A stretch of 63,989 bases of DNA, filler included, from Pelomyxa schiedti (lineage: Eukaryota > Protista > Evosea): the NCBI GenBank assembly GCA_020536535.1. It is 7 parts of 7 records of this genome, joined end to end, with 100 filler letters (N's around TTAATTAATTAA, not from the genome) between each part and the next. Parts side by side here need not be neighbours in the genome. Positions count along the whole stretch, not along the records: positions 1 to 12,647 come from JAHLWZ010001209.1; 6 more parts are not named here. One strand, written 5' to 3'. The first letter of the stretch is position 1; every line of letters begins with the position of its first letter. The position numbers and the translations under genes were made by a program. Positions 73 to 12,647 of this stretch are shown piece after piece. A model generated the notes under the pieces. The model saw only the letters and a list, made by a program, of their open reading frames with translations, ran no database searches and was not told where the DNA came from.

Positions 73-1206
73 ATGGCGGTCTGCTGCGCGGCGATCGATC
101 GGTGGTCGGGCTCCTACTGCTGCCCGTCGATGGTCGCCTGGGCGCGCTCGACGTCGCTGCTCGGAGACTGGGCCCGCTACTGGGTCCTCAGGCCCGAATC
201 TGATGCCGTTTTCGAGATGCCAACCGAGCACGACGGCGGCCTGAAGAACCACTTGTACCTGAGTGTGTCTCCGACTCTGGGAGTTGTGGGACACCGGTGT
301 TTCACCTGTTCCCCGAACCAAGTTGTTTTGGGGTGCTTGGGACTGGACAGGCTCTTATTCGGGGCTGTGGACCGTGGGGATGTCGTCACCGTGCAACTGC
401 AGGCGCCCTGTGGTAATATTCCGCCTGGGAGGATGATTTGGAGAATGTACGACCACAATGGTGACACTGTTGCCTGCAACAGGAGTTGGATTGTGGTGTT
501 GAGTGCCTCGAATCCAGTTTTTGTCCCCGAACTGTATGTGTGGAAAGTGGTGCGCGGTGCTCCAATCGAGCCAATGATTCAGTTCTCTAAGGTGCATAGA
601 GCACATAGAATTCAGTTCTCACCCTTGTGCGATGATGTTATTGTGATTGTGGACTCTGGTTCAGTAACGTTTGTTGACTTGGTTGAAAGCTTCAAAGCAA
701 GGGTGCTGGTGGTCACATTGAATTTTGTGGCCGCTGACCCCTCTCCACTACTTGGGGTGTTGTGGATGCCAAATGGTTCCCTCTGCACACTGCATTGCAT
801 CACCAATTCCAAATCCTGTTTCCTATTGGAACGCACAACCGGGAAGCGGCATCAGTTTCAGAAGTTCCCCGATGTCGTAAGGCCCATTGGCATAAGCCAC
901 GCCTTTGTGATGCCAATGGATACACCGCAGTACCAGGTTTACAACACTGGAAACCTCGCATCACCATCACTATGCATTCCATGCACGTGGGCACGTCACC
1001 ATAAACCATCAGGCCTCATTGCATCAACAACACTCAAAAGAAGGTTGCTTTCCAGTGCCACTGAGATACCCCTCAGAGTGCATGATTCCGTAACAGGGTT
1101 TTGCTTTGGAGACTTCACTGTGCACGTGGATCTTGAGAGAATTGTGAGGGAGGTGGAAAAATGGGCACTCATACTTGAAAAAAGAAAGGGCCCATCCTTG
1201 AAATAG
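73..1206 (+). CDS. Uncharacterised intronless protein, 'SPTLG/CNxKW' family (377 aa)
   Basis: Uninterrupted ORF; motifs LSVSPTLGVV, CNRSWIVV, VDLVESFKARVLVV and VHDSVTG are shared with five other ORFs in the window. Confidence 0.75.
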   Translation: MAVCCAAIDRWSGSYCCPSMVAWARSTSLLGDWARYWVLRPESDAVFEMPTEHDGGLKNHLYLSVSPTLGVVGHRCFTCSPNQVVLGCLGLDRLLFGAVDRGDVVTVQLQAPCGNIPPGRMIWRMYDHNGDTVACNRSWIVVLSASNPVFVPELYVWKVVRGAPIEPMIQFSKVHRAHRIQFSPLCDDVIVIVDSGSVTFVDLVESFKARVLVVTLNFVAADPSPLLGVLWMPNGSLCTLHCITNSKSCFLLERTTGKRHQFQKFPDVVRPIGISHAFVMPMDTPQYQVYNTGNLASPSLCIPCTWARHHKPSGLIASTTLKRRLLSSATEIPLRVHDSVTGFCFGDFTVHVDLERIVREVEKWALILEKRKGPSLK

Positions 1207-1254: not shown

Positions 1255-2580
1255 TCATTCAACATCAGTCCCTGAGTTCTGAGAGTCAAAGGCCACAGTG
1301 ACGTAACCAACATGGAACCCTGTGGCACCATCATGCACTGCAAACGTGATTTCAGTGTCACTACCATCAAAGACTAGCTCGTCTGTTGTTGAGACAATGA
1401 GGCACGACTGGCTGTGGAGTGGTGGCCAGGCCCATGTGCATTCAACTTCAAGTGAGGGTGCCACATCTCCAGTTTTGTAGACAGTAAACTGGGAGGTGAG
1501 TCTCACAAAGATGTGACTGGTTCCAATTTGCACTGCTGGTGTGCCTAGCTGTGGAAAGCGAACACTGGGCTTGCCAGTCTCATTATCCACAAGGAAGAAA
1601 CTTCCCCCAGAGTCGTCATAGTGGAGTACGCATACAGAGCCGTCAGGTCTCCATGTGAGAGCACCAGTGGAATCACTATCACCGCACCACTCCTTTAAAA
1701 CCACCTTTGATGTCACAACCAGTTTGCTTTCTTTAGAGCTGGCTTGCAAGTCACAAAACTGTACAAAGCCTCCTCGAGGCCAACAAGAAGGAAAGGCCAT
1801 GAGAACATCATCACTGAATGGTGAAAAACGAGTCATCAAGGAGACTTCAATCCCTTCAAAATGAAGCTCCGGTTTCACTACATCCCCTCCAACTACTTTC
1901 CACACATGTACATTGGGACCGCTCCCAGCGAACCCAACGATCCACTTCCTGTTGCAAAGGAGGTGCTCGCACTTGGTATCAAGGACCCCAACTCTTCTTG
2001 TTGGTGCCACACCATCAACACCCACTTCCGCAATGATGTGTTCTGCAAGGGAACTCCCAATGACTCTCGATTTAATCAGCACCCTGCTGTGCCCAAGAGA
2101 ACCGCACACAGAATTCAGGCTATTTCGGAACGAAGAGTGGCCGACAAGCCCCAGGGTCGGTGACACACTCACGAACAAGAAGTGATCCCTGATCGGCAGC
2201 GTGAACACAGCCTCGTCGCAGGGGGTGAGGACCCAGTCCACAGCCCACGCCCTGAACACCTCCGTCGATTGTATCCACTCAATCATCGATGGTGACACAC
2301 AACAACAACAACAACAACAGCCGCCAACAGAGATGTTTGACCCATCACCATCACAACCACTGCCAACAACAGCCTGTGCAATCGTCGTAATTGTTGGTGT
2401 TGGTCTTCCTCTCCTCCTTCTTCTTGTTTCGGTGGTTGGGGCACAAATGATGGCCATCACCTGCGACTTGGCTGTTGTTGTTGTTGTTTTGTGTTTTGGT
2501 GGTGTTGGTGTTGTTGCTGGCGGCACTTGAGAGGTTTGTTGTGTCGGTAGTTGGCGGGGTGACGATTCGCTGAGCCCCAT
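1255..2580 (-). CDS. Uncharacterised 'SPTLG/CNxKW' family protein (up to 441 aa), convergent paralog of 73..1206
   Basis: ORF with VSVSPTLGLVG, CNRKWIVG, CDLQASSKESKLVV and VHDGATG; low-complexity N-terminus, so the start codon is uncertain. Confidence 0.75.
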   Translation of the reverse strand: MGLSESSPRQLPTQQTSQVPPATTPTPPKHKTTTTTAKSQVMAIICAPTTETRRRRRGRPTPTITTIAQAVVGSGCDGDGSNISVGGCCCCCCCVSPSMIEWIQSTEVFRAWAVDWVLTPCDEAVFTLPIRDHFLFVSVSPTLGLVGHSSFRNSLNSVCGSLGHSRVLIKSRVIGSSLAEHIIAEVGVDGVAPTRRVGVLDTKCEHLLCNRKWIVGFAGSGPNVHVWKVVGGDVVKPELHFEGIEVSLMTRFSPFSDDVLMAFPSCWPRGGFVQFCDLQASSKESKLVVTSKVVLKEWCGDSDSTGALTWRPDGSVCVLHYDDSGGSFFLVDNETGKPSVRFPQLGTPAVQIGTSHIFVRLTSQFTVYKTGDVAPSLEVECTWAWPPLHSQSCLIVSTTDELVFDGSDTEITFAVHDGATGFHVGYVTVAFDSQNSGTDVE

Positions 2581-2871: not shown

Positions 2872-4336
2872 TCATGGCTGCAGGTCATTCAGCTCCAACG
2901 ATTTGTGAAGCGATTTGTTCTTCCTGGCTCTGCACCACATGTGTGTGATGTACGCTCCAAACGCACACCCTCCAAACACAAAAACAAACCCAAACGAAAG
3001 CAGCACCCACCACCCTCCTGAAATTTTCTCCTTGCTGCTTCCACTGGTGCTCATGACAGAACTGCTCCACATGACTGACGAAGCAGCCGACGATGATGAT
3101 GGCTGTGACACATCGGCTGGTGATGACGATGTGGATGGGTACGTGGATGTTGAGGTGGACTGTGATTCTGACTGTGACGATGAGGTTGATTCGGAATCAG
3201 ACATTGGCTGAGAAGAGATGGATTGTGAGAGAGAAAAGGACTTGGAATTTGACTTCAAGAGAGATGATGAAGCAGAGAAAGACACCGAGTTTGACTGTGA
3301 TGACGAGTCTGATGGCAGTGGTGAAATGGATGCTGACTGTGATTTCCAGTGGGATGGTGAAAGGGATTCTGAAAGTGATGGAGATTCTGAAACTGATGTG
3401 GACTCTGATTCACCTTGAGGGACGGAACCAGGTGCCGAGAACGAACTTGATGACGACAGTGGCTCTGACTGTGAAACTGACTCAGAAGATGATTCTGAGA
3501 AGGGTGACGCTTGTGACGAATACAAAGACACGGAATGGGATGAGAGGGAAACAGAAGATGACTGAGAACCCGATGATGACCGAGAAACAGATGCTGACAA
3601 GGATATTGAATTCAATGACGACTGAGATGACAGTGACTGAGAACCTGATGATGACAAAGGTATGGAATCGGATGATGACAGTGACTGAGAACTCGATGAT
3701 GACTGTGAAAAAGATGAGGAGTCAGAAGAGGATGACAAAGATTGGGAATGAGATGATGACCGTGATGAGGAATATGATGACGAAGGCAATGGCACAACAG
3801 AGATATCAAGGCTATAAGGACCAAACGAAGTCGAAAGCTGTGAAGCAACCACGATGTAGTCTCCACTGCTGGCAAGATCAAGAACCACTTGTGTACTATC
3901 CTTTGAGGAAAGTGAGCGACATTGTTATAAACTCAAAAAGCTCACCTCCCCTTCGCATGTAGAACAGTTAGCATTTGACACCTCAATGTATGTACTATAT
4001 TCTGCCGAAATTCGGGCTGTCAACGTTCCAGCTGGTGCAGTGAAGGTGTAGCAGTCACCTGCAGAAAAACTTAGTCACACACGATTCATGGGTGAAGGAC
4101 GACAACCGTGATAATTATCCAACAGACGACATGGTGTAGGTTGTGGGGATGTAGCCGCGAGTGAGCCTCCATCAGAGTATGGAAGAGTGATAGATGCGCA
4201 AATCTCACATTGTTCCCCTGCAACAAAAAAAAAAACGTGAGTTTGTGAAACCAACAGTGAATATTGTGAAACCCGAGCATGACCAGCCACTCCAAGGCAA
4301 CACGAGCAGCAAAGTAATAAGTGCCACACGCAGCAT
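2872..4336 (-). CDS. Surface protein copy 1: signal peptide, PPC-like Cys domain, Ser-rich stalk, TM helix and short tail (4 exons)
   Basis: Manual splicing gives MLRVALITLLLVLPWSGWSCSG|EQCEICASITLPYSDGG...TPCRLLDNYHG|DCYTFTAPAGTLTA...CSTCEGE|DSTQVVLDLASSGDYIVV..., then ~250 Ser-rich residues and GGWWVLLSFGFVFVFGGCAFGAYI; GT-AG introns. Confidence 0.8.
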
Positions 4337-4552
4337 TTCGTTTTTTCCTTGCAGAAGTGACAAAAAGGGCGTGGGTTTGGTTGATGTCCTGGTTTATATG
4401 TCTTCGACATTCACCACATCATTTTATTTACTTCTTTTTGTAAGGATTTAGGGGAATGGGAAGTGCAATCAAGATCATCAACGAAACTCATCAGGGGGTT
4501 GATGGTGCGCTACCGGCACAACATCATTCGAAGTTTGATAATGATTGTTTCG

Positions 4553-5659
4553 TCATGACTGTTGAACTGACTCGGAATGTGATGAATGTGACTCTGAGAA
4601 GGGTGACGCTTGTGACGAATACAAAGACATGGAATGGTATGATGACTGAGAAAGAGCTGATGATTGAGAACTCGATGATGACGGAGAAACAGATGTTGAC
4701 AAGGATATTGAATGCAATGATGACTGAGAACTCAATGATGACTCAGAAGACGATGACAAAGAAATAGAGTGTGACGATGACTGAGAAGACAGTGACTGAG
4801 AACCTGATGATGAAGACGATTGGGACAAAGATAGGGAATGGGGTGATGACAAAGAAACTGAATGTGACGATGACTGAGAATACAGTGACTGAGAAAGAGA
4901 ACCCGATGATGACTGTGATAGAGATGATGATAAATATAGGGAAGTGGAGGATGACTCTGACTCAGAACTCGATGATGACTGTGAAATAGATGATGACTGT
5001 GAAAAAGATGCTGAGCCAGAAGAGGATGACAAAGATTGGGAATGAGATGATGACTGAGATGAGGAGTCCGAGGAAGACGACAGTGATTCTGATAATGGTA
5101 CCACAGAGATATCAAGTACATAACTGCCAAACAGTTCAACTTGCAGCTGGGAAACAATCACTGTGTAGACTCCACTGGAAACTGAAACTACTACTTGTTC
5201 AGTACTCTTGGAGGAAGGTGAGCTGCATTGTTATACACTCAAAACACTCACCTCCCCTTCGCAGGTAGAACAGTCGCCATTCCCCACCTCAAGGTAACCC
5301 ATATAACTCACTGATGAAATTTGGGCCGTCAACGTTCCAGATGGTGCAGTGAATTTGTAGAAGTCACCTACACCAAAAAAACGAAAAAAAACCTGAGCGT
5401 GATTCCTAGAGGAGCACCAACCGTAATAATTTTGCCCTGGATAACATGGTGTATCTTGTGGGTCTGTGTGAGACAGGTTGCCTGACCCATGGTATGGAAG
5501 AGTGACAGTGGAGAAAACTGAGCATCGTTCACCTGAAAAACAACAAAAAAAACAGAATGATGTGAGTCTGGTGAATTTTGTTGTTGCTCGCGAACCAGAG
5601 CACGACGAGCCACGCCAACACACCACTAGCACCAAAGTAATAAGGGCCACATGCACCAT
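4553..5659 (-). CDS. Surface protein copy 2: signal peptide, PPC-like domain and Ser stalk, no TM (4 exons)
   Basis: MVHVALITLVLVVCWRGSSCSG|ERCSVFSTVTLPYHGSG...TPCYPGQNYYG|DFYKFTAPSGTLTA...CSTCEGE|...; the stalk ends HSESVQQS* with no hydrophobic anchor. Confidence 0.75.
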
Positions 5660-6282
5660 TTCGAATTATTTAAATAAATTGGAATGGGTTGATGTGTCTG
5701 CAACATTCAGGTCTTCTCCAGTGCCAGAACAACAACAGGACGTACACCCGTGTTCACCCAAATGTTTTCGATTTGAGATCGGAAACAGGGCAAAAAAGAT
5801 TGCAGAGGGGCTCGACTCGTGTGCACTTGTTGGTTCCAAAAAAAAAAAACAAGAATCGGGTTGTTGGTGATGCCACGTGAGTGTGAGAGTTCGAGCAGCA
5901 AGGTTTACACAACGAGCGCATCGAGGAGATCCCCGTGTGGTGATGCGAATGGAGGGTGTCTCACTTGCCACTGTGTACCGTCACCGACATATGCCCCTTG
6001 ACCGTGAGTGAGGGCAGAACCGACCACCACCTAAGATGACTGAAGGGATGAGACAGTACTTGCGGGACTTCAAGTTGCACTGATATCAGCCGCGCAACTA
6101 AGGCACTTGGGTTTTCATACCACACACATACCAAAAAGCAAGTTGGGCAAAGAAACGAGGTACTGACTCTCCCACCCTTATTAATTTTTATTAAATTATT
6201 TAATTGCATTTAATTACATGCAGTTCAATAGGCACAAAGAATTTTATGGTATATGCAAAGTCCGGAAACAGTCTTCATCAGG

Positions 6283-6766
6283 TCAGCTTGAACGTTTTGG
6301 GGGATGCCTAGTTTGGTGCAGCTCTAAGGCATCATCCATGTCCTTCACTGAGATTGCCTTGATCAGATCACATCGATACTCTTCACGTGCGCTGCGGCGG
6401 AATACATTCAACTGAAACCTTTCCAGGCCAGGGTTGTGGGATGCTTCCGCCTGCACTCGCTTCCACCACCTCTCCGCCGGCTCGTCACTTCCTTGTGTCA
6501 ATGCCAGGAAGCAGTCGGTCTCTGACTCGTCACTCAACACACCAAATCGCTTCAAGAACCTTCGCTTGAACTCTTCCAAACTCGTGATATCCCTTGCCAG
6601 TACTGCAAAACCAACAGCTGAGCCTATCATGGCCAGTCTCGCCTTGCTCAAAGGTAATGGAATGATCACAGGCTGCCACTATCCCGAGACGTTTCTCAAG
6701 AAAACAAGGTGCACCATGTGTGGGTGGCGAGTTTTGGTGCCTCCGCTGGCCTGCATTATCAACCAT
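6283..6766 (-). mobile_element. Degenerate retrotransposon Gag-like fragment
   Basis: ITSLEEFKRRFLKRFG...LALTQGSDEPAERWWKRV resembles the Ty3/Gypsy retrotransposon Gag core (W.EFK..FL..F...L.Q..ES...Y..RF); upstream frames are broken; no pol or LTR seen. Confidence 0.45.
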
Positions 6767-6921
6767 CCACGATTTCGCCGTGGTTGATGGGCATTGTCAA
6801 TTATTTTTCGCTGCAGCCAGTTGATGATGCTCATCGATCCTGCGCTACCGTAACGAAGATGGTCGCAACAACATTATTCGAAGTTTGAATGCTTCGTCAT
6901 TTAGACTAGAGATCTGGTGTT

Positions 6922-6986
6922 ACATTGGAGGGCATTCAGCTCCATTGAATCAGGAAGTGAGTTGCTGTTCCTGGCTCGGCACCACA
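6922..6986 (-). pseudogene. Remnant 3' end of a sixth surface-protein copy
   Basis: Reads VWCRARNSNSLPDSMELNALQ versus MWCRARKNSNSLPDSMELNDLY in copy 5; DNA nearly matches ~11483-11540. Confidence 0.75.
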
Positions 6987-7021
6987 CTCTCACGCACAAA
7001 CACAAACACAACATTTTCTCG

Positions 7022-7135
7022 TTCTGTTACCCAAAAGACCTCTTCTGTCCGCTGTATGTGCGCATCCCCTTCCCCATAATTACAATTCCGCCTTTACGTT
7101 CTTCATTCCGCACTGCACAAACTCAATGTTATGTT
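7022..7135 (+). repeat. Degenerate local duplicate of ~7690-7785
   Basis: Shared ccgctgt(a)tgtg..catccccttcc and gttcttcattccgcac.gc.cacaaact segments. Confidence 0.55.
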
Positions 7136-7628
7136 TGAGGAGAAGGCATACAACCCGCGATTGTGGGACACTGCGGGTTTGAAACCCTTCCCTCTGTGTG
7201 TGACTGAACAATTCCTTCAGCTGGCAAAGATTATTACAGAATAAGACCCTGTTGCTATCCTGGAACAGACATTTTTTGTATTCTAGTTTCTATGGGTTTA
7301 TTTGTTGCGATGAACTCATCTGCTTTTCTCTTGTCAACCCTCACAGTTTTGTCAGATTTCCCACCACTGCCTGACTGATCCTGCTTGCCGGAAAAGTGTG
7401 AGAGAGTTTTTGTTGCTGTGTGCTGAATTGTGGAGTGTTGATTACCAAAGAGAATCAACGGCGGTGTAGTGAAATCTCCGACTTGGTGCTGGTCATCCTG
7501 TTTCGGACACTGGTGGCCGTGAACTCACTGCGCCAACTGGAACCCCCTCGGGTGTGTGCTGTGCTGCTTTCCGCCTTCTCATATTATTGATAACTTCACT
7601 CAACAAAACAAAGGAAAGATTCACGGAG

Positions 7629-8458
7629 ATGGGTGGTTGCAACTTTTCAGAAAAAGTTTTTAAAATTCTTCCGCACGAACTGTGGATGTTCATTTTCTCT
7701 TCCGGCTTTCCGCTGTGTGCATCCCCTTCCTTGAATTAATAATCAGTTCTTCATTCCGCACCGCGCACAAACTGTCAGTTCCATGAATAATTCACACTTT
7801 GCACAGGTGTGCCGAGATTTCAGAACTCTTTCATCGTCTGACATTCTTTGGGCGCGGTTCATCCCGGAGACCATAATCAGTTCCTCAACCAACAAGGGTG
7901 CCACTCTCAAGTCCTTGTTACGATCAACAGCTGCGTTCTACTTGTACAAAAGCAAGAATTGCATATTGAAACCATTAATGGACAAATACCAGTGAGCGGG
8001 TTTTAATTGTTACCAATAAAATTGACCGACTTGCAATAGCCAAGGAAATGCTTGAAGATAAGTGCTAAGCCTTAGCTTACTCCGCGTTGCAGCAAGGGCA
8101 CAGCACCGCTGATGATGGCAAAATTGCTCAAATGAAGCAGTCCGTTACAAGGAATATGTTGCAGCACTCATTCCCAGAGCGGAACCTCAAGTGTTTTATG
8201 GATGTGATGGCCAAAGCACCAGATGTACTGGGGCACAAGTGTGCTGCAAAATCAGCCCCAACTGCTGAAAGTGTTCCCATTGAACGTGGGAATTGTGCAG
8301 CACACCGGCCATATCACAATATGACGAGAGAGATCGGCAGGCATGGTGGAATCGTGATTGCATTACCAGAGGGATCGCTGTGGGATCAACGTTCTCAACC
8401 GGGACCCTTTGACGGTGGCACTGTCTCCGATATTTTAGTAAAGGAATTAATTACTTAA
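7629..8458 (+). CDS. F-box-like protein, multi-exon, possibly pseudogene
   Basis: FKILPHELWMFIFS ... VCRDFRTLSSSDILWARF matches the F-box consensus LP.E....IFS...VC+.FR.L..D.LW; exact splicing and 3' end unresolved. Confidence 0.5.
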
Positions 8459-8712
8459 TGAACAATAAGTGGATAAGGAATTGATACGTAGTTTTGCATT
8501 TGATCATTGTGCACAGATAGAGTGTTGTATGCATAATTCCCTCGTCATTTTCCGCACTAATCGTATTGCAAGACAAGATACATTCTGCCACTGTGGAAAT
8601 GTACGCTTCAGTGCCGCGAAATATCGGAACCCTTTGATGGTGGCACTGTCTCCGATATTTTAGTAAAGGAATTAATTACTTTATGAACAATAAGTTCGCT
8701 GGATAAGGAAAT
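8408..8712 (+). repeat. Direct duplication of ~65-80 bp at ~225 bp spacing
   Basis: tttga(c/t)ggtggcactgtctccgatattttagtaaaggaattaattact occurs at ~8408 and ~8634. Confidence 0.85.
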
Positions 8713-9242
8713 TACTTTACTGAGCTCAGTAAACATACCTATATTCACAACTTCAGCAGCGATAGCTCTGAGAGTAATATTGCATTGTTGTAGGACCGCC
8801 ATGAGGAGAAACACTCTAAGGCTATCCTACAATCTCAGTTATTCCTCTTGACAGAAGTCAGAACAGGAATAACAACTCTTCTGGACTTACCACAAAGTAA
8901 TAGACAAGCATACATAGTACTTTCTGAGGCGCTCATTAACATGAGTTAGCCCTTGTGACACATCTGGAGGAATCTGAGTGGAAATAACTGAACTCGCCCC
9001 TAGGGGTGCTCATAGCCACGATCAATGCGCTATTGCACGTTAATTGCCACCCCCAAAAAAAAATTACCATTCACCTGAACGACAACCCACGACTCACACC
9101 GAACTCATTTTCATATTTTTGTTCGTGTCGACACGACGAAATCGGTAATTAATGAAAAAGTTCAAGAAAAGAAGATGCGGTTCTGATAGGTCCTACCCCT
9201 TCAAAACGCTTTACAAAAGAGAATGTAGCTGTCATTGCCTCA

Positions 9243-10178
9243 TTATCCACACAACCCGGCCGCACACCTAATGGCACAAAAAGATGGCGGGAGAGAGGAA
9301 GACTCTGAGGATGAGAGGGAATCAGATAATGAGGATTCAGAGGAAGAGAGAGAATTGGATGATGACAGAGATGAAGATTCTGAGGAAGATTGGGAATTNN
9401 NNNNNNNNNNNNNNNNNNNNNNNNNNNNNNNNNNNNNNNNNNNNNNNNNNNNNNNNNNNNNNNNNNNNNNNNNNNNNNNNNNNNNNNNNNNNNNNNNNGA
9501 ATTGGATGATGACAGAGATGAAGATTCTGAGGAAGATTGGGAATTAGATGATGATGACTGAGACGAGGAGTCTGAGGAAGATAATTCTGATGACGAGGAC
9601 TGAGCTGCCCCCACAACATAGATATCAACAACATAATCGAAATCGGCATCAGAGTACCCTTCGGTAACAATCGCAATGTAACTTTCGCCTGCCACAACTT
9701 CACGTGTCATGAGGGTCCGATCCTTTAGGTGAAGTGAGAATCAAATTGCTGGAAAACCAAAAAGCTCACATCACCAATGCATTGACAGGTACCAGTCTCC
9801 AATTCCAGCCACGACTTGTAGGGTACAGGGTCCGCAAGTTTAAAGGTCAACGTTCCCGCAGTAGTTATTGTGAATTTGTAGTAGATCCCTATAGATGCGA
9901 AGACATTTCAGATTCGTTTCGATGGGAAATGAGTTCTACAAACCAGTCAGGCCATCACCCGTCCAACATGGAGTTGGCTTTGGATCCGAGGTTCCTAAGT
10001 GGCCTGAACCATGGTATGGAAGCGTGACAGTGGTGGCGGATGAGCAGTAGTCTACACCTACAAAGCAAAACAATGTGAACCTCGCAAAACTCACAACAAC
10101 TAACAAAACGCGCGAACCGAAGCAAGAACCACAGAAAGACAACAACAGAAGAGCAAGGGTTCGTCCGGGACGTGGCAT
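9243..10178 (-). CDS. Surface protein copy 3: signal peptide, PPC-like domain and short Ser stalk, no obvious TM
   Basis: ...SFCGSCFG|VDYCSSATTVTLPYHGSG...TPCWTGDGLTG|IYYKFTITTAGTLTF...TCQCIGD|DRTLMTREVVAGESYIAIV...; stalk spans the N-gap at 9399-9498, so its length is unreliable. Confidence 0.7.
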
Positions 10179-10492
10179 GCAGATGGTTTAAAAATGTTAA
10201 GTAAATTTTGTTAAGTAATTCTCGAAACAGCGTGAACTTTCTGAACGGTGTTTTGGGAAAATAACAAAAATAAGAAAACAACATTGAAGTTCGTGTCTGT
10301 CCGACTCGGATGTTTTGGAAATTGAGTGCACTCACAAGACAACAACTGTAACTCTCTCGAACATACCAGAACATCAGAGTCGACCGAATCCAGCAAGTCA
10401 GTCTCTCAGTCTGCGTTGCGAGTGCTCGGATTTCCAGATAGATTGTCAGGAAAGAGAACCCTTAGCATGGCACTACATACCCGGTCAGTGCA

Positions 10493-11306
10493 TCAGAACG
10501 CCCTCCCACAATCCACTGAAGTTTCACTGGATTTGATGATTGGTGCTGGGAGCACCCAGTTCCCGAACAAAAAAAAAATTCTTTTTCTCACACGTGGTTG
10601 CGGTGTAGTGACAGCAACCAAACAAACACTCTCAAGGACATAGTCACCATGCTGACCTATCTCCTGCTGTGAAACAACCACTGGGGAAAAAGTTGATACC
10701 TGCGTTTTGCCCTTTGGGAAAAGTGAGAACTGCATTGAACTTGTGAACTCAAAAAAAAAGCTCACCTCTGCTACGCACGTAGAACAGTCTCCAGATCCCA
10801 GTTCAAGGTAACACTTGTAAGTAGTGGACGAAAGTTGAGCTGTCAAAGTTCCAGCCGGTGCAGTGAATTTGTAGAAGTCACCTATATACAATAAAAGACA
10901 GTGCCTCAGCACTGGCTTACAGATAGCTACAAAGCACTCTTTTTGTACAAACCATTAAAAGGTTGATCCGAATAACAGGGGGTTGTTGGGTCAGTGGGTG
11001 CCATGGTGCCTGAGCCATGGTATGGAAGAGTTACCGTGGTGAACTTTGAACAGAGTTCCCCTACAAAACGAAATTAACTTTAAGTCAATTTTCCACAGTG
11101 GACGTTGAGTGGCACTGACCAACAACACCCACCCACGCCATTGATTTTTCAAACTGCTCAATGGCCTCAGTATACTTACCCAGGCTGCACAATGCTTTTC
11201 CGAGGTTGTTCAGAGTCTGATTATTGTTGTCAGAGTTGGGAAAGGCTCCAAATTTACCCACACCTGAGGAAAGTTTGGGTCTGATGTTGCATAATCGCCA
11301 CGCCAC
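10493..11306 (-). pseudogene. Surface protein copy 4: TPR-like 5' exon in place of the signal peptide, internal deletion, no stalk
   Basis: Exons ELCSKFTTVTLPYHGSG...TPCYSDQPFNG|DFYKFTAPAGTLTA...CSTCVAE|GKTQV...; upstream ORF LNNLGKALCSLGKYTEAIEQFEKS has a phase-1 G|GTCAGT donor (intron 11061-11119). Confidence 0.6.
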
Positions 11307-11472
11307 AAGGCTTGAGGCCTTTAGGCCAGAGCGAGAGGTTGAACTAATAAAATGACGAAGATTATTTCGGTAACGATGATCATCAATTGATTATTTTATT
11401 CACCCACGTGACACGACATTCAACGACGCCGAAAAACGTCACACACCGACCATACCAAATGTATTCACAATT

Positions 11473-12647
11473 TTAATACAAATCATTCAGCTCCATTGAA
11501 TCGGGAAGTGAGTTGCTGTTCTTCCTGGCTCTGCACCACATGTGTGTGATGTACGCACCAAACGCACATCCTCCAAACACAACAACAACCCCTAACGAAA
11601 GCACCACCCACCACCCTCCTGGAATGCTCTTGCTGCTGCCACTGCCACTGGTGCTAATGACAGAACTGCTCCGAATCACTGACGAAGAAGTAGAGGATGA
11701 TGATGATGGCTGTGACACATCAGTGGATGATGTGGATATTGAAGAGGAACTGGAAAGGAGGTGTGACTGCGATTCTGAGCGTGACTGTGAAGTTGAATCA
11801 GAGTCGGACATTGATGCTGACTGAGAATTGGAAAGTGAGTGAGATTGCGACTCTGATTCTGAAACAGATTCTGAGAGTGATAGAGATTGTGAAAGTGACC
11901 CAGAAGATGATTGGGATGATGACAAAGAAATAGAATGTGACGATGACTGAGAAGACAGTGACTTAGAACTCGATGATGACTGAGAAGACAGTGACCGAGA
12001 AATCGATGACGACCGAGAAAGAGATGATGACTGAGAAAGAGATGACGACCGAGAAATCGATGACGACCGAGAAAGAGATGACGACTGAGAAAGAGATGAC
12101 GACAAAGATATGGAATTGGAGGAAGATGACTGGGAACTCGATGATGACTGTGAAGAGGATGATAGGGAAGATGACAGTGATTCTGATAATGATGACACAT
12201 GGATATCAAGTACATAATCGCCATAGGAACTCTTCGAGTTCTGGGAAACAACCACCATGTACTCTCCACTGCTGGAAACAGCAAGTTCTAGTACTTTCTG
12301 ACCCTTTGGGGAAAGTGTGAATTGCATCGCTTGTACACAAAACACTCACCTGTAAAAGACATGATGAACAGTCGCCAGTTGCCAGTTCCATGTACCAGTT
12401 GTAATTAGTGGACGAAAGTTCAACTGTCAACGTTCCCTCAGCAGGTGCCGTGAATTTGTAGAAGTCACCTAGATACAGGAAAACATCAGCCCGGTTTCAA
12501 TAGGAATGCGTCATACAAACCAGCATAAGTATCACCCTTCGCGCATGGAGTGACTTTTGGGTCCGAAGTTGTCAAGGAGCCTGAGACATGGTATGGAAGA
12601 GTGACTGTGGTTGAGACTGAGCATAGTGTCCCTACAAAAAAAAAAAA
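11473..12647 (-). CDS. Surface protein copy 5: PPC-like domain, Ser stalk and TM; 5' exon cut off by scaffold end
   Basis: TLCSVSTTVTLPYHVSG...TPCAKGDTYAG|DFYKFTAPAEGTLT...CSSCLLQ|GQKVLELAVSSSGEYMVV..., then stalk and GGWWVVLSLGVVVVFGGCAFGAYI. Confidence 0.8.
11965..12105. repeat. Imperfect 18-nt tandem repeat encoding the Ser stalk (SSSLSQ/SSSISR)
   Basis: Units such as gatgacgaccgagaaaga / gatgatgactgagaaaga / gatgacgaccgagaaatc repeat in series. Confidence 0.75.

What the first reader, a model, noticed from the sequence alone, without database searches (positions are those of the whole stretch)
2872..12647. Tandem array of diversified surface proteins with a fixed-length hypervariable loop
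Five copies on the same strand share the scaffold C..(T)VTLPY.GxG...TPC-x7-G|D.Y.FTAP.GTLT...Y.E...G.CS.C and two intron positions (phase 1 in the Gly after the loop, phase 0 after CxxC). The four copies with a visible 5' exon also share a phase-1 intron there. The segment between TPC and G is exactly 7 aa in all five but shares almost no sequence: RLLDNYH, YPGQNYY, WTGDGLT, YSDQPFN, AKGDTYA. A second variable patch sits before the YLE strand (SAEYST, SSVSYMG, ADPVPYKS, SSTTYKC, SSTNYNW). Inference: a conserved fold with CDR-like loops on a mucin-like stalk looks like a receptor or adhesin repertoire for recognising prey, symbionts or self. I know of no description of such a family.
Basis: partly seen in the sequence, partly recalled or inferred. 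Interest (0 to 1): 0.85.

Follow-up and report, generated by a model that had tools for sequence, protein, structure and literature searches.

The report
Amoeba surface mucins capped by PPC domain
A small tandem cluster of genes in the anaerobic amoeba Pelomyxa schiedti encodes membrane-anchored, serine-rich "mucin-like" proteins tipped by a divergent copy of a binding domain well known from bacteria (the PPC / collagen-binding fold); its loops vary, but not measurably faster than neutral drift.

Summary
The piece is a whole 12,647-bp contig of Pelomyxa schiedti. It carries five diverged copies (32-59% aa identity) of a three-exon, about 110-aa cysteine-containing domain, all on the minus strand.

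The fold is a known one. It is a divergent PPC / collagen-binding-domain beta-sandwich:
- phmmer hits to Pfam-verified bacterial PPC repeats, E 1e-8 to 1e-4;
- hhalign probability 96.8%;
- AlphaFold pLDDT 90, with top Foldseek hits to collagenase PPC/CBD structures.

Only copy A, and probably E, have the full architecture: signal peptide, domain, 53-62% Ser stalk, TM and short tail. B and C lack a TM. D is a fragment. An orphan tail remnant lies between B and C.

The x7 loop is one of about four equally variable patches. By strand topology these appear to lie at the membrane-distal end. Codon models give omega 1.4 there (not different from 1) and 0.6 for the scaffold.

A paralog on another contig, Pelo_3935, has five tandem domains with the same intron pattern, 5-6-aa loops and equally variable sequence.

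Best reading: a birth-and-death family of mucin-like surface adhesins. A diversifying receptor repertoire is neither shown nor excluded.

The parts
2872..4336 (-). Copy A, the only copy complete within the contig (438 aa by my model). It has a signal-peptide exon 4336-4273, domain exons 4217-4107 and 4058-3946, and a last exon 3900-2872. The last exon holds the end of the domain to about 3787, the Ser-rich stalk about 3786-3082, and the TM plus basic tail about 3081-2875. The stop is at 2872-2874.
   Evidence: Splice model and translation. It equals NCBI Pelo_16896 (P0001) except for the 5' end. Stalk is 53% Ser.
4108..4128 (-). Copy A x7 loop (RLLDNYH), the last seven codons of exon 2, directly before the phase-1 intron.
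4553..5659 (-). Copy B. It has a signal peptide, the domain (x7 loop at 5423-5443) and a 60% Ser stalk, but it stops after the stalk with no TM or tail. It is not annotated in the NCBI record.
   Evidence: The 3' junction block is shared with 6865-6900.
6925..7010 (-). Orphan remnant of the C-terminal TM and cytoplasmic tail of a family member, with no domain or stalk attached.
   Evidence: Repeat family D12. tblastn with the copy-A tail hits 6987-6925.
9243..10178 (-). Copy C, the most divergent copy (32-44% identity). It has a signal peptide, the domain (x7 loop at 9945-9965; CxC instead of CxxC) and a Ser-rich stalk interrupted by the assembly gap 9399-9498. It ends at 9243 without a TM.
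9399..9498 (.). Assembly gap inside the stalk repeat of copy C. It is flanked by identical 47-nt ends (9352-9398 equals 9499-9545). The frame is preserved both as written and if the ends are merged.
   Evidence: TRF finds a 45-nt period next to it.
10493..11060 (-). Copy D, a gene fragment. It has the three domain exons (x7 loop at 10954-10974) with a 6-aa deletion in the sixth strand. It has no signal-peptide exon, no stalk and no TM. A TPR-like fragment lies directly upstream (11088-11390).
11473..12631 (-). Copy E. Its 5' exon is lost at the contig edge. It has the domain (x7 loop at 12522-12542), a 62% Ser stalk (about 12189-11683), and a TM plus tail (about 11682-11476) whose DNA is about 90% identical to that of copy A.
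   Evidence: (family D10).

Best explanation
The array is a lineage-specific, tandemly duplicated birth-and-death family of Pelomyxa schiedti type I membrane glycoproteins. Each intact member has four parts. First comes a cleavable signal peptide. Next is one N-terminal beta-sandwich domain of about 110 aa, a cysteine-bearing and highly divergent PPC / collagen-binding-domain module. Then comes a 170-235-aa stalk that is more than 50% serine and is presumably heavily O-glycosylated and extended. Last is a single TM helix with a short basic cytoplasmic tail.

The inferred mechanism is that the stalk holds the PPC-fold cap away from the membrane, where it acts as a binding (adhesin or lectin-like) module. 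Solved proteins of this fold act as binding modules.

The strands and the four conserved cysteines are under weak purifying selection. The loops at the distal tip, including the x7 segment, are essentially unconstrained in sequence. The x7 segment is constrained in length, probably because it is a strap between the TPC cysteine and the next strand.

Unequal crossing-over in the repetitive stalks swaps and deletes 3' ends. This would account for TM-less copies, fragments, an orphan tail, and a TM/tail region that is younger than the domains.

Shown: gene structure, homology, predicted fold, architecture, selection estimates. Inferred: surface location, glycosylation, binding function, loop geometry.
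For: Organism and contig.

Gene models, signal peptide, stalk and TM.

PPC homology:
- An exhaustive phmmer search of 1.8e9 representatives returns 18 non-self hits. Of these, 14 (P0004-P0008, P0010-P0012, P0014, P0016-P0019 and the paralog P0002) match the 111-residue query (P0001:65-175) over about residues 30-110 or more of it.
- Thirteen of the sixteen hits scanned score 42-177 bits on PF04151.
- An hhalign comparison of an amoeba-only profile with the bacterial PPC segments gives probability 96.8%, E 2.6e-10.

Fold: AlphaFold mean pLDDT 90.3, pTM 0.83, eight strands. Top Foldseek hits are the B. anthracis collagenase PPC domain 5sv5 and the ColG collagen-binding domain 1nqj/1nqd/2o8o, with E 7e-6 to 1e-4 and TM 0.62-0.68.

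Selection: GY codon model gives omega 0.60 for the scaffold (2dlnL=11.1 against omega=1) and 1.43 for the distal loops (2dlnL=0.35).

Recombination: A-E dS is 0.25 in the TM/tail against 0.71 in the domain.

Family depth: Pelo_3935 on another contig has five tandem domains plus a TM, with the same intron pattern of phases 1, 0, 1.
Against: - There is no expression, localisation or glycosylation data.
- The Pfam PPC model itself is below threshold (15 against 25.9 bits).
- The acidic residues that are invariant in the bacterial PPC segments are not conserved here, so binding chemistry cannot be transferred.
- Whole-domain omega of 0.73 and three truncated copies are also compatible with a family that is largely decaying.
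- The loop geometry is deduced from strand order, not from coordinates.
Confidence: 0.6

Rival explanations
1. The array is part of a diversifying receptor or adhesin repertoire. Positive selection drives CDR-like loops at the distal tip of a fixed scaffold, to recognise varied prey, endosymbionts or self.
For: - The variable patches fall in four loops that, by topology, share the membrane-distal end. Mean identity there is 0.20 against 0.50 for the opposite-end loops (p=0.003).
- The omega point estimate in those loops is 1.43, and several pairwise dN(variable)/dS values exceed 1.
- The signal peptide, TM and tail are much better conserved than the ectodomain.
- The genes are in tandem.
- P. 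schiedti lives with prokaryotic endosymbionts (abstract of PMC10579272).
Against: - Omega is not distinguishable from 1. Intron 2 is randomised between copies, so an unconstrained loop is expected to look unrelated.
- A 7-column window this variable arises in 24% of column shuffles.
- The same loop varies equally between the five repeats within the single protein Pelo_3935, and its length there is 5-6.
- Three of five copies lack a TM or are fragments.
- No further members were found in the protein databases.
Confidence: 0.2
2. The array is mostly a graveyard of decaying duplicates of one functional gene, and the variability is simply pseudogene drift.
For: - B and C lack a TM. D lacks the signal peptide, stalk and TM. 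There is an orphan tail remnant.
- TE-like gag debris lies between the copies.
- Whole-domain omega is 0.73.
- Only copy A has a usable NCBI model.
Against: - All five copies keep open domain exons, all splice sites and all four core cysteines.
- Scaffold omega is significantly below 1.
- A and E keep low-complexity ORFs of more than 800 nt open, with a conserved TM/tail.
Confidence: 0.15
3. The apparent array is an assembly artefact, with single-cell MDA chimeras or collapsed alleles producing it.
For: The assembly comes from amplified single cells (PMC8887013). There is a gap with overlapping ends.
Against: The copies differ by 41-68% at the protein level and have different intron sequences and lengths. 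They cannot be alleles or mis-joined identical repeats. Only the stalk of copy C is affected by the gap.
Confidence: 0.03

Closest known systems
Bacterial pre-peptidase C-terminal (PPC, PF04151) domain / clostridial collagenase collagen-binding domain (ColG s3b, ColH s3; B. anthracis collagenase PPC 5sv5)
   Same: Same beta-sandwich fold in the model (TM 0.62-0.68). There is detectable sequence homology over the core from the D-x-Y-x-F strand to the last Y-x-L strand. The size is the same, about 110 aa. From general knowledge, these domains act as binding modules.
   Different: - It is eukaryotic and split by two spliceosomal introns.
- It falls below the Pfam threshold.
- The acidic cluster (NDDGG-type) is replaced by a CxxC motif, and there are two further conserved cysteines.
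- It is not attached to a peptidase. It forms the N-terminal cap of a mucin-like TM protein.
C-terminal claudin-binding domain of Clostridium perfringens enterotoxin and PliG lysozyme inhibitors (same fold group in the Foldseek list)
   Same: Foldseek E 3e-5 to 1e-3. These are single-domain binders built on the same sandwich.
   Different: TM-scores for the enterotoxin domain are lower (0.38-0.55). No sequence similarity was detected. The resemblance is in fold only.
Mucin-like / serine-rich surface glycoproteins of protists (for example Entamoeba SREHP and proteophosphoglycans, trypanosomatid mucins); from general knowledge, not tested here
   Same: A signal peptide, a long Ser-rich low-complexity region built of short degenerate repeats, membrane anchorage and tandem gene copies.
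   Different: Those proteins are mostly GPI-anchored and have no folded PPC-type cap. Here there is a TM helix with a conserved cytoplasmic tail. No sequence relationship was tested.
Pelo_3935 (P0002), the P. schiedti paralog on contig JAHLWZ010000301
   Same: Same domain (E 2.4e-10), same cysteine pattern, same intron positions and phases, and a TM with a cytoplasmic tail.
   Different: It has five tandem domains and no Ser-rich stalk. The Cys-to-intron loop is 5-6 aa rather than 7. It is a single gene, not an array; no family member was found within the 2.4 kb upstream and 10 kb downstream held in locus L002.

Membership tests
PPC domain (PF04151) / collagen-binding-domain fold | Scores above the Pfam gathering threshold | tested here: not met
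   15.0 bits against the 25.9 cut-off, E 0.048, and only profile positions 3-20 are matched. P0002 scores 14.7 bits.
PPC domain (PF04151) / collagen-binding-domain fold | Significant sequence or profile similarity to bona fide PPC domains | tested here: met
   phmmer E 1.8e-8 to 7.5e-4 to proteins carrying 2-7 Pfam-verified PPC repeats. hhalign probability 96.8%, E 2.6e-10.
PPC domain (PF04151) / collagen-binding-domain fold | PPC/CBD-type beta-sandwich fold | tested here: met
   Model pLDDT 90.3, pTM 0.83. Top PDB matches are 5sv5, 1nqj, 2o8o and 1nqd. This rests on a predicted structure, not a solved one.
PPC domain (PF04151) / collagen-binding-domain fold | Conserved acidic residues of the bacterial domains (invariant Asp positions in the aligned bacterial segments) | tested here: not met
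   D56, D73 and D74 of the bacterial alignment have no conserved counterpart. The amoeba copies have CxxC in that region.
PPC domain (PF04151) / collagen-binding-domain fold | Located C-terminal to a secreted peptidase | tested here: not met
   No other Pfam domain is found in P0001. The domain is N-terminal. Many bacterial hits also lack a peptidase.
Mucin-like type I membrane glycoprotein | N-terminal signal peptide | tested here: inconclusive
   Exon 1 of A, B and C encodes M-(basic)-hydrophobic run-small residues, by inspection. No predictor was available. D lacks it and E is cut.
Mucin-like type I membrane glycoprotein | Long Ser/Thr-rich low-complexity stalk | tested here: met
   53%, 60% and 62% Ser over 235, 179 and 169 aa in A, B and E. 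The repeats are degenerate with 18-57-nt periods.
Mucin-like type I membrane glycoprotein | Single TM helix and cytoplasmic tail | tested here: met
   A and E have GGWWV...FGAYITHMW followed by CRARKN.... This is not met in B, C and D.
Mucin-like type I membrane glycoprotein | O-glycosylation and surface exposure | not testable with these tools
   Needs biochemistry.
Diversified (CDR-like) receptor repertoire | dN/dS above 1 in the variable loops | tested here: inconclusive
   Omega is 1.43 over 20 codon columns; the LRT against 1 gives 2dlnL=0.35. Five sequences give little power.
Diversified (CDR-like) receptor repertoire | Variable residues clustered on one exposed surface | tested here: inconclusive
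   Strand alternation places loop7, L34, L56 and L78 at the end opposite the C-terminus. Mean identity is 0.20 against 0.50 (p=0.003).
Diversified (CDR-like) receptor repertoire | Loop length fixed across paralogs | tested here: not met
   Seven in all five array copies, but 6, 6, 6, 6 and 5 in the five domains of Pelo_3935.
Diversified (CDR-like) receptor repertoire | Large repertoire of intact, expressed members | not testable with these tools
   Only P0001 and P0002 are in the protein databases. Within the contig, only 1-2 of the 5 copies are intact.

The most novel reading that the evidence does not exclude
The PPC-fold cap is a non-immunoglobulin variable recognition module. A larger and mostly unannotated genomic repertoire of these genes would diversify its membrane-distal loops under positive selection, while recombination in the stalk shuffles anchors. 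This would give an endosymbiont-bearing amoeba a variable surface receptor set for discriminating bacteria and archaea.
Probability: 0.12. Interest if true: 0.75.

Novelty: new variant of a known kind. Interest (0 to 1): 0.38.

Why it matters
If the architecture is real and expressed, it shows a bacterial-type PPC / collagen-binding fold recruited as the exposed cap of a eukaryotic mucin-like membrane protein. The domain has been re-engineered with cysteines in place of the acidic cluster, and it has been resident long enough to acquire conserved introns. It gives a concrete candidate for surface adhesion or particle recognition in Pelomyxa, an amoeba known for stable prokaryotic endosymbionts. 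It also flags a family that automated annotation largely missed: one of the five copies is modelled usably, and that one has a wrong 5' end. It is not, on present evidence, a hypervariable receptor system.

Tried and rejected
- Word-indexed protein searches returned only the window's own protein or nothing. Queries were the last exon, the domain of P0001, and the family alignment. Length limits and poor annotation of the family make these blanks uninformative.
- PDB sequence searches with a single sequence and with a profile gave nothing meaningful. Only the fold comparison worked.
With the exon-3 alignment it found 143 pattern matches but no relative.
- Among the remaining hits, P0003 is a coiled-coil protein whose repeated short stretch matches query residues 64-101, with no PPC Pfam hit. 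It was discarded as spurious. P0013 also lacks a PPC Pfam hit. P0009 and P0015 match only short repeated stretches and were not scanned against Pfam. None of these three was used as evidence.
- A literature search for PPC domains in amoebae found nothing. The P. schiedti genome paper does not mention the family.
- Pairwise Nei-Gojobori dN/dS on the 7-codon loop alone is too noisy, with 4-5 synonymous sites.
- Intron 3 is conserved above shuffled expectation (0.61-0.85 against 0.49) while intron 2 is randomised. Introns therefore could not serve as a clean neutral yardstick.
- Model coordinates are not exposed by the tools, so disulfide pairing and surface mapping could not be computed.

Full report
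**Source.** The domain-bearing last exon of the first copy retrieves one database protein at 100% identity. It is hypothetical protein Pelo_16896 of Pelomyxa schiedti, seen on a single contig of 12,647 bp. The contig is JAHLWZ010001209.1 of assembly GCA_020536535.1, so the piece is an entire scaffold of this free-living anaerobic archamoeba. The published assembly comes from micromanipulated single cells. It is intron-rich, at 7.4 introns per gene, almost all GT-AG (PMC8887013).

**Checking the observation.**
- Motif scans of all six frames place LPY, TPC and FTAP/FTIT five times, always on the minus strand.
- Reading the minus strand and splicing at GT-AG sites gives five gene models. Each domain is encoded by three exons of about 37 codons.
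- The intron after the variable segment always splits a Gly codon (phase 1). The next intron lies three residues after the CxxC motif (CxC in copy C), in phase 0.
- tblastn with all copies finds exactly five domains in the contig, plus an orphan piece of the C-terminal tail at 6925-6987.
- The copies are old and clearly distinct: 32-59% protein identity over the domain.

**The gap.** Gap 9399-9498 lies in the serine-rich stalk of copy C. The 47 bases before it equal the 47 bases after it, and that is the maximal end overlap. The serine-rich frame is the same coordinate frame on both sides. The ORF is therefore continuous as written and also if the ends are merged. The true number of stalk repeats is unknown. 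The gap does not touch the domain.

**State of the copies.**
- Copy A is complete. It has a 21-residue signal-peptide exon joined by a phase-1 intron, the domain, a 235-aa stalk with 53% Ser, a TM helix and a short basic tail.
- Copy E has the same 3' architecture, and its TM/tail DNA is about 90% identical to that of A (family D10). Its 5' exon lies beyond the contig edge.
- Copy B stops after the stalk with no TM.
- Copy C ends without a TM after the gap.
- Copy D has only the three domain exons, with a 6-aa deletion. It has no stalk, and a TPR-like fragment sits where the signal-peptide exon should be.
- Between B and C lie a weak gag-like ORF, local repeats and the orphan tail.
- The NCBI annotation models only copy A usably, and it reads the signal-peptide exon out of frame from an upstream ATG. 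B is unannotated. One 355-aa model spans E, D and C.

**What the domain is.**
- Pfam gives only a sub-threshold PPC hit: PF04151, 15 bits against 25.9.
- An exhaustive phmmer search of 1.84 billion representatives returns 18 non-self hits. One is a second Pelomyxa protein, Pelo_3935. Thirteen are bacterial or metagenomic proteins in which the matched stretches are tandem repeats that score 42-177 bits on PF04151. Of the other four, one has no PPC Pfam hit and is a coiled-coil repeat protein, one is a repeat protein with no PPC Pfam hit, and two match only short repeated stretches and were not scanned. None of these four was used as evidence.
- A profile built only from the amoeba sequences aligns to a profile of the bacterial segments with 96.8% probability, E 2.6e-10. 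The alignment runs from the G-D-x-Y-x-F strand to the final Y-x-L-x-I strand.
- AlphaFold2 on the joint alignment gives a confident eight-strand sandwich, pLDDT 90.3 and pTM 0.83.
- The best PDB matches are the PPC domain of B. anthracis collagenase and the ColG and ColH collagen-binding domains (E 7e-6 to 2e-3, TM 0.62-0.68). PliG and the claudin-binding domain of C. perfringens enterotoxin follow.
- The scaffold is therefore a known fold and superfamily. It is a strongly derived version. The acidic positions that are invariant in the bacterial segments are not conserved, and the amoeba domains instead carry four conserved cysteines: one N-terminal, one in TPC, and the CxxC pair.

**Is the loop special?**
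- Its mean pairwise identity is 0.17, against 0.46 for the domain.
- A 7-column window this low appears in 24% of column shuffles.
- Using the DSSP strands of the model, the poorly conserved elements are the x7 segment, L34, L56 (with strand 6) and L78. L23, L45 (CxxC) and L67 are better conserved.
- All inter-strand loops after strand 2 are 2-6 residues long, so successive loops must alternate between the two ends of the sandwich. The variable ones then share the end opposite the C-terminus, which is the end away from the stalk. Mean identity is 0.20 against 0.50 for the other end (Mann-Whitney p=0.003).

**Selection.**
- Pairwise Nei-Gojobori estimates give dS 0.4-1.2 and dN/dS 0.33-0.96 for the domain.
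- On the ML tree, a Goldman-Yang model gives omega 0.73 for the domain. The structurally defined scaffold has omega 0.60 (2dlnL=11.1 against omega=1), and the distal loops have 1.43 (2dlnL=0.35).
- Intron 2 is no more similar between copies than shuffled sequence. An unconstrained 7-codon segment is therefore expected to look unrelated.
- The loops behave as neutral. Positive selection is neither shown nor excluded with five sequences.
- The TM/tail of A and E has dS 0.25 against 0.71 in their domains. A-B identity is mosaic along the gene. This indicates recombination or conversion, which is plausible in repetitive stalks. It also explains TM-less copies and the orphan tail.

**The wider family.**
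- Pelo_3935 lies on a 74-kb contig. It has a signal peptide, five tandem copies of the domain, a TM and an acidic tail.
- Each of its domains shows the same introns: phase 1 at the residue before the aromatic strand, phase 0 a few residues after CxC, and phase 1 between domains. The exon structure therefore predates the array.
- Its Cys-to-intron segment is 6, 6, 6, 6 and 5 residues long. It is as dissimilar between these internal repeats as between the array genes.
It also shows that sequence freedom of this segment is a property of the fold rather than evidence of a repertoire.
- No other members were found in the protein databases or in JGI metagenomes. Given the poor annotation, this says little about the genome.

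**Conclusion.** The structure and homology claims are well supported. The array encodes mucin-like type I membrane proteins capped by a divergent PPC / collagen-binding-fold domain, and it evolves by tandem duplication, stalk recombination and decay. Two things rest on analogy with other proteins of the fold and with mucin-like stalks, and are untested: a binding (adhesin) role, and an extended glycosylated stalk. The CDR-like repertoire idea remains a minority possibility, to be settled by a genome-wide paralog census, site models, structural mapping and RNA-seq.

Noticed in passing
window 4273-4410 (-): The NCBI model of Pelo_16896 starts at an upstream ATG (4410) and reads the signal-peptide exon out of frame, without intron 1. 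A 64-nt exon 4336-4273 with a phase-1 GT-AG intron gives a classical signal peptide that is conserved in copies A, B and C.
   Followed up: partly
window 9544-12526 and 4553-5659: The annotation of the record has one 355-aa model spanning copies E, D and C, and no model at all for copy B. The family is therefore largely invisible in the predicted proteome.
   Followed up: partly
window 73-1206 (+) and 1255-2580 (-): These are two convergent paralogous ORFs, 38% identical over 362 aa (E 1e-58), with no Pfam match. The second has a low-complexity N-terminus rich in Thr, Pro and Cys. Function is unknown.
   Followed up: partly
window 11088-11390 (-): An open frame with a single TPR-like motif lies directly upstream of copy D. 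TPR_10 gives E 4e-6, just under threshold. It may be fused in frame through a 7-aa exon, which looks like a gene-fragment junction.
   Followed up: partly
window 6283-6669 (-): A 128-aa ORF has a weak retrotransposon-gag match (PF03732, E 0.007, below threshold). It lies in the gene-poor stretch between copies B and C.
   Followed up: no
window 4510-4560 and 6865-6900; 8400-8470 and 8625-8695: A block of about 45 nt directly follows both the truncated stalk of copy B and the orphan tail remnant. Separately, there is a 71-nt direct repeat at 96% identity, 225 nt apart. Both are unexplained and may mark rearrangement or mobile-element ends.
   Followed up: partly
introns at window 3901-3945, 5207-5251, 9723-9769, 10712-10765, 12304-12349 (-): The third intron is conserved between copies well above shuffled expectation (interior identity 0.61-0.85 against 0.49). 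The second intron is randomised. The reason for this constraint on a 45-54-nt intron is unknown.
   Followed up: partly
L002 2386-5282 (Pelo_3935): This gene has five tandem PPC-like domains, each built from three exons with intron phases 1, 0, 1. The modules are symmetric in phase, consistent with domain multiplication by exon duplication.
   Followed up: yes
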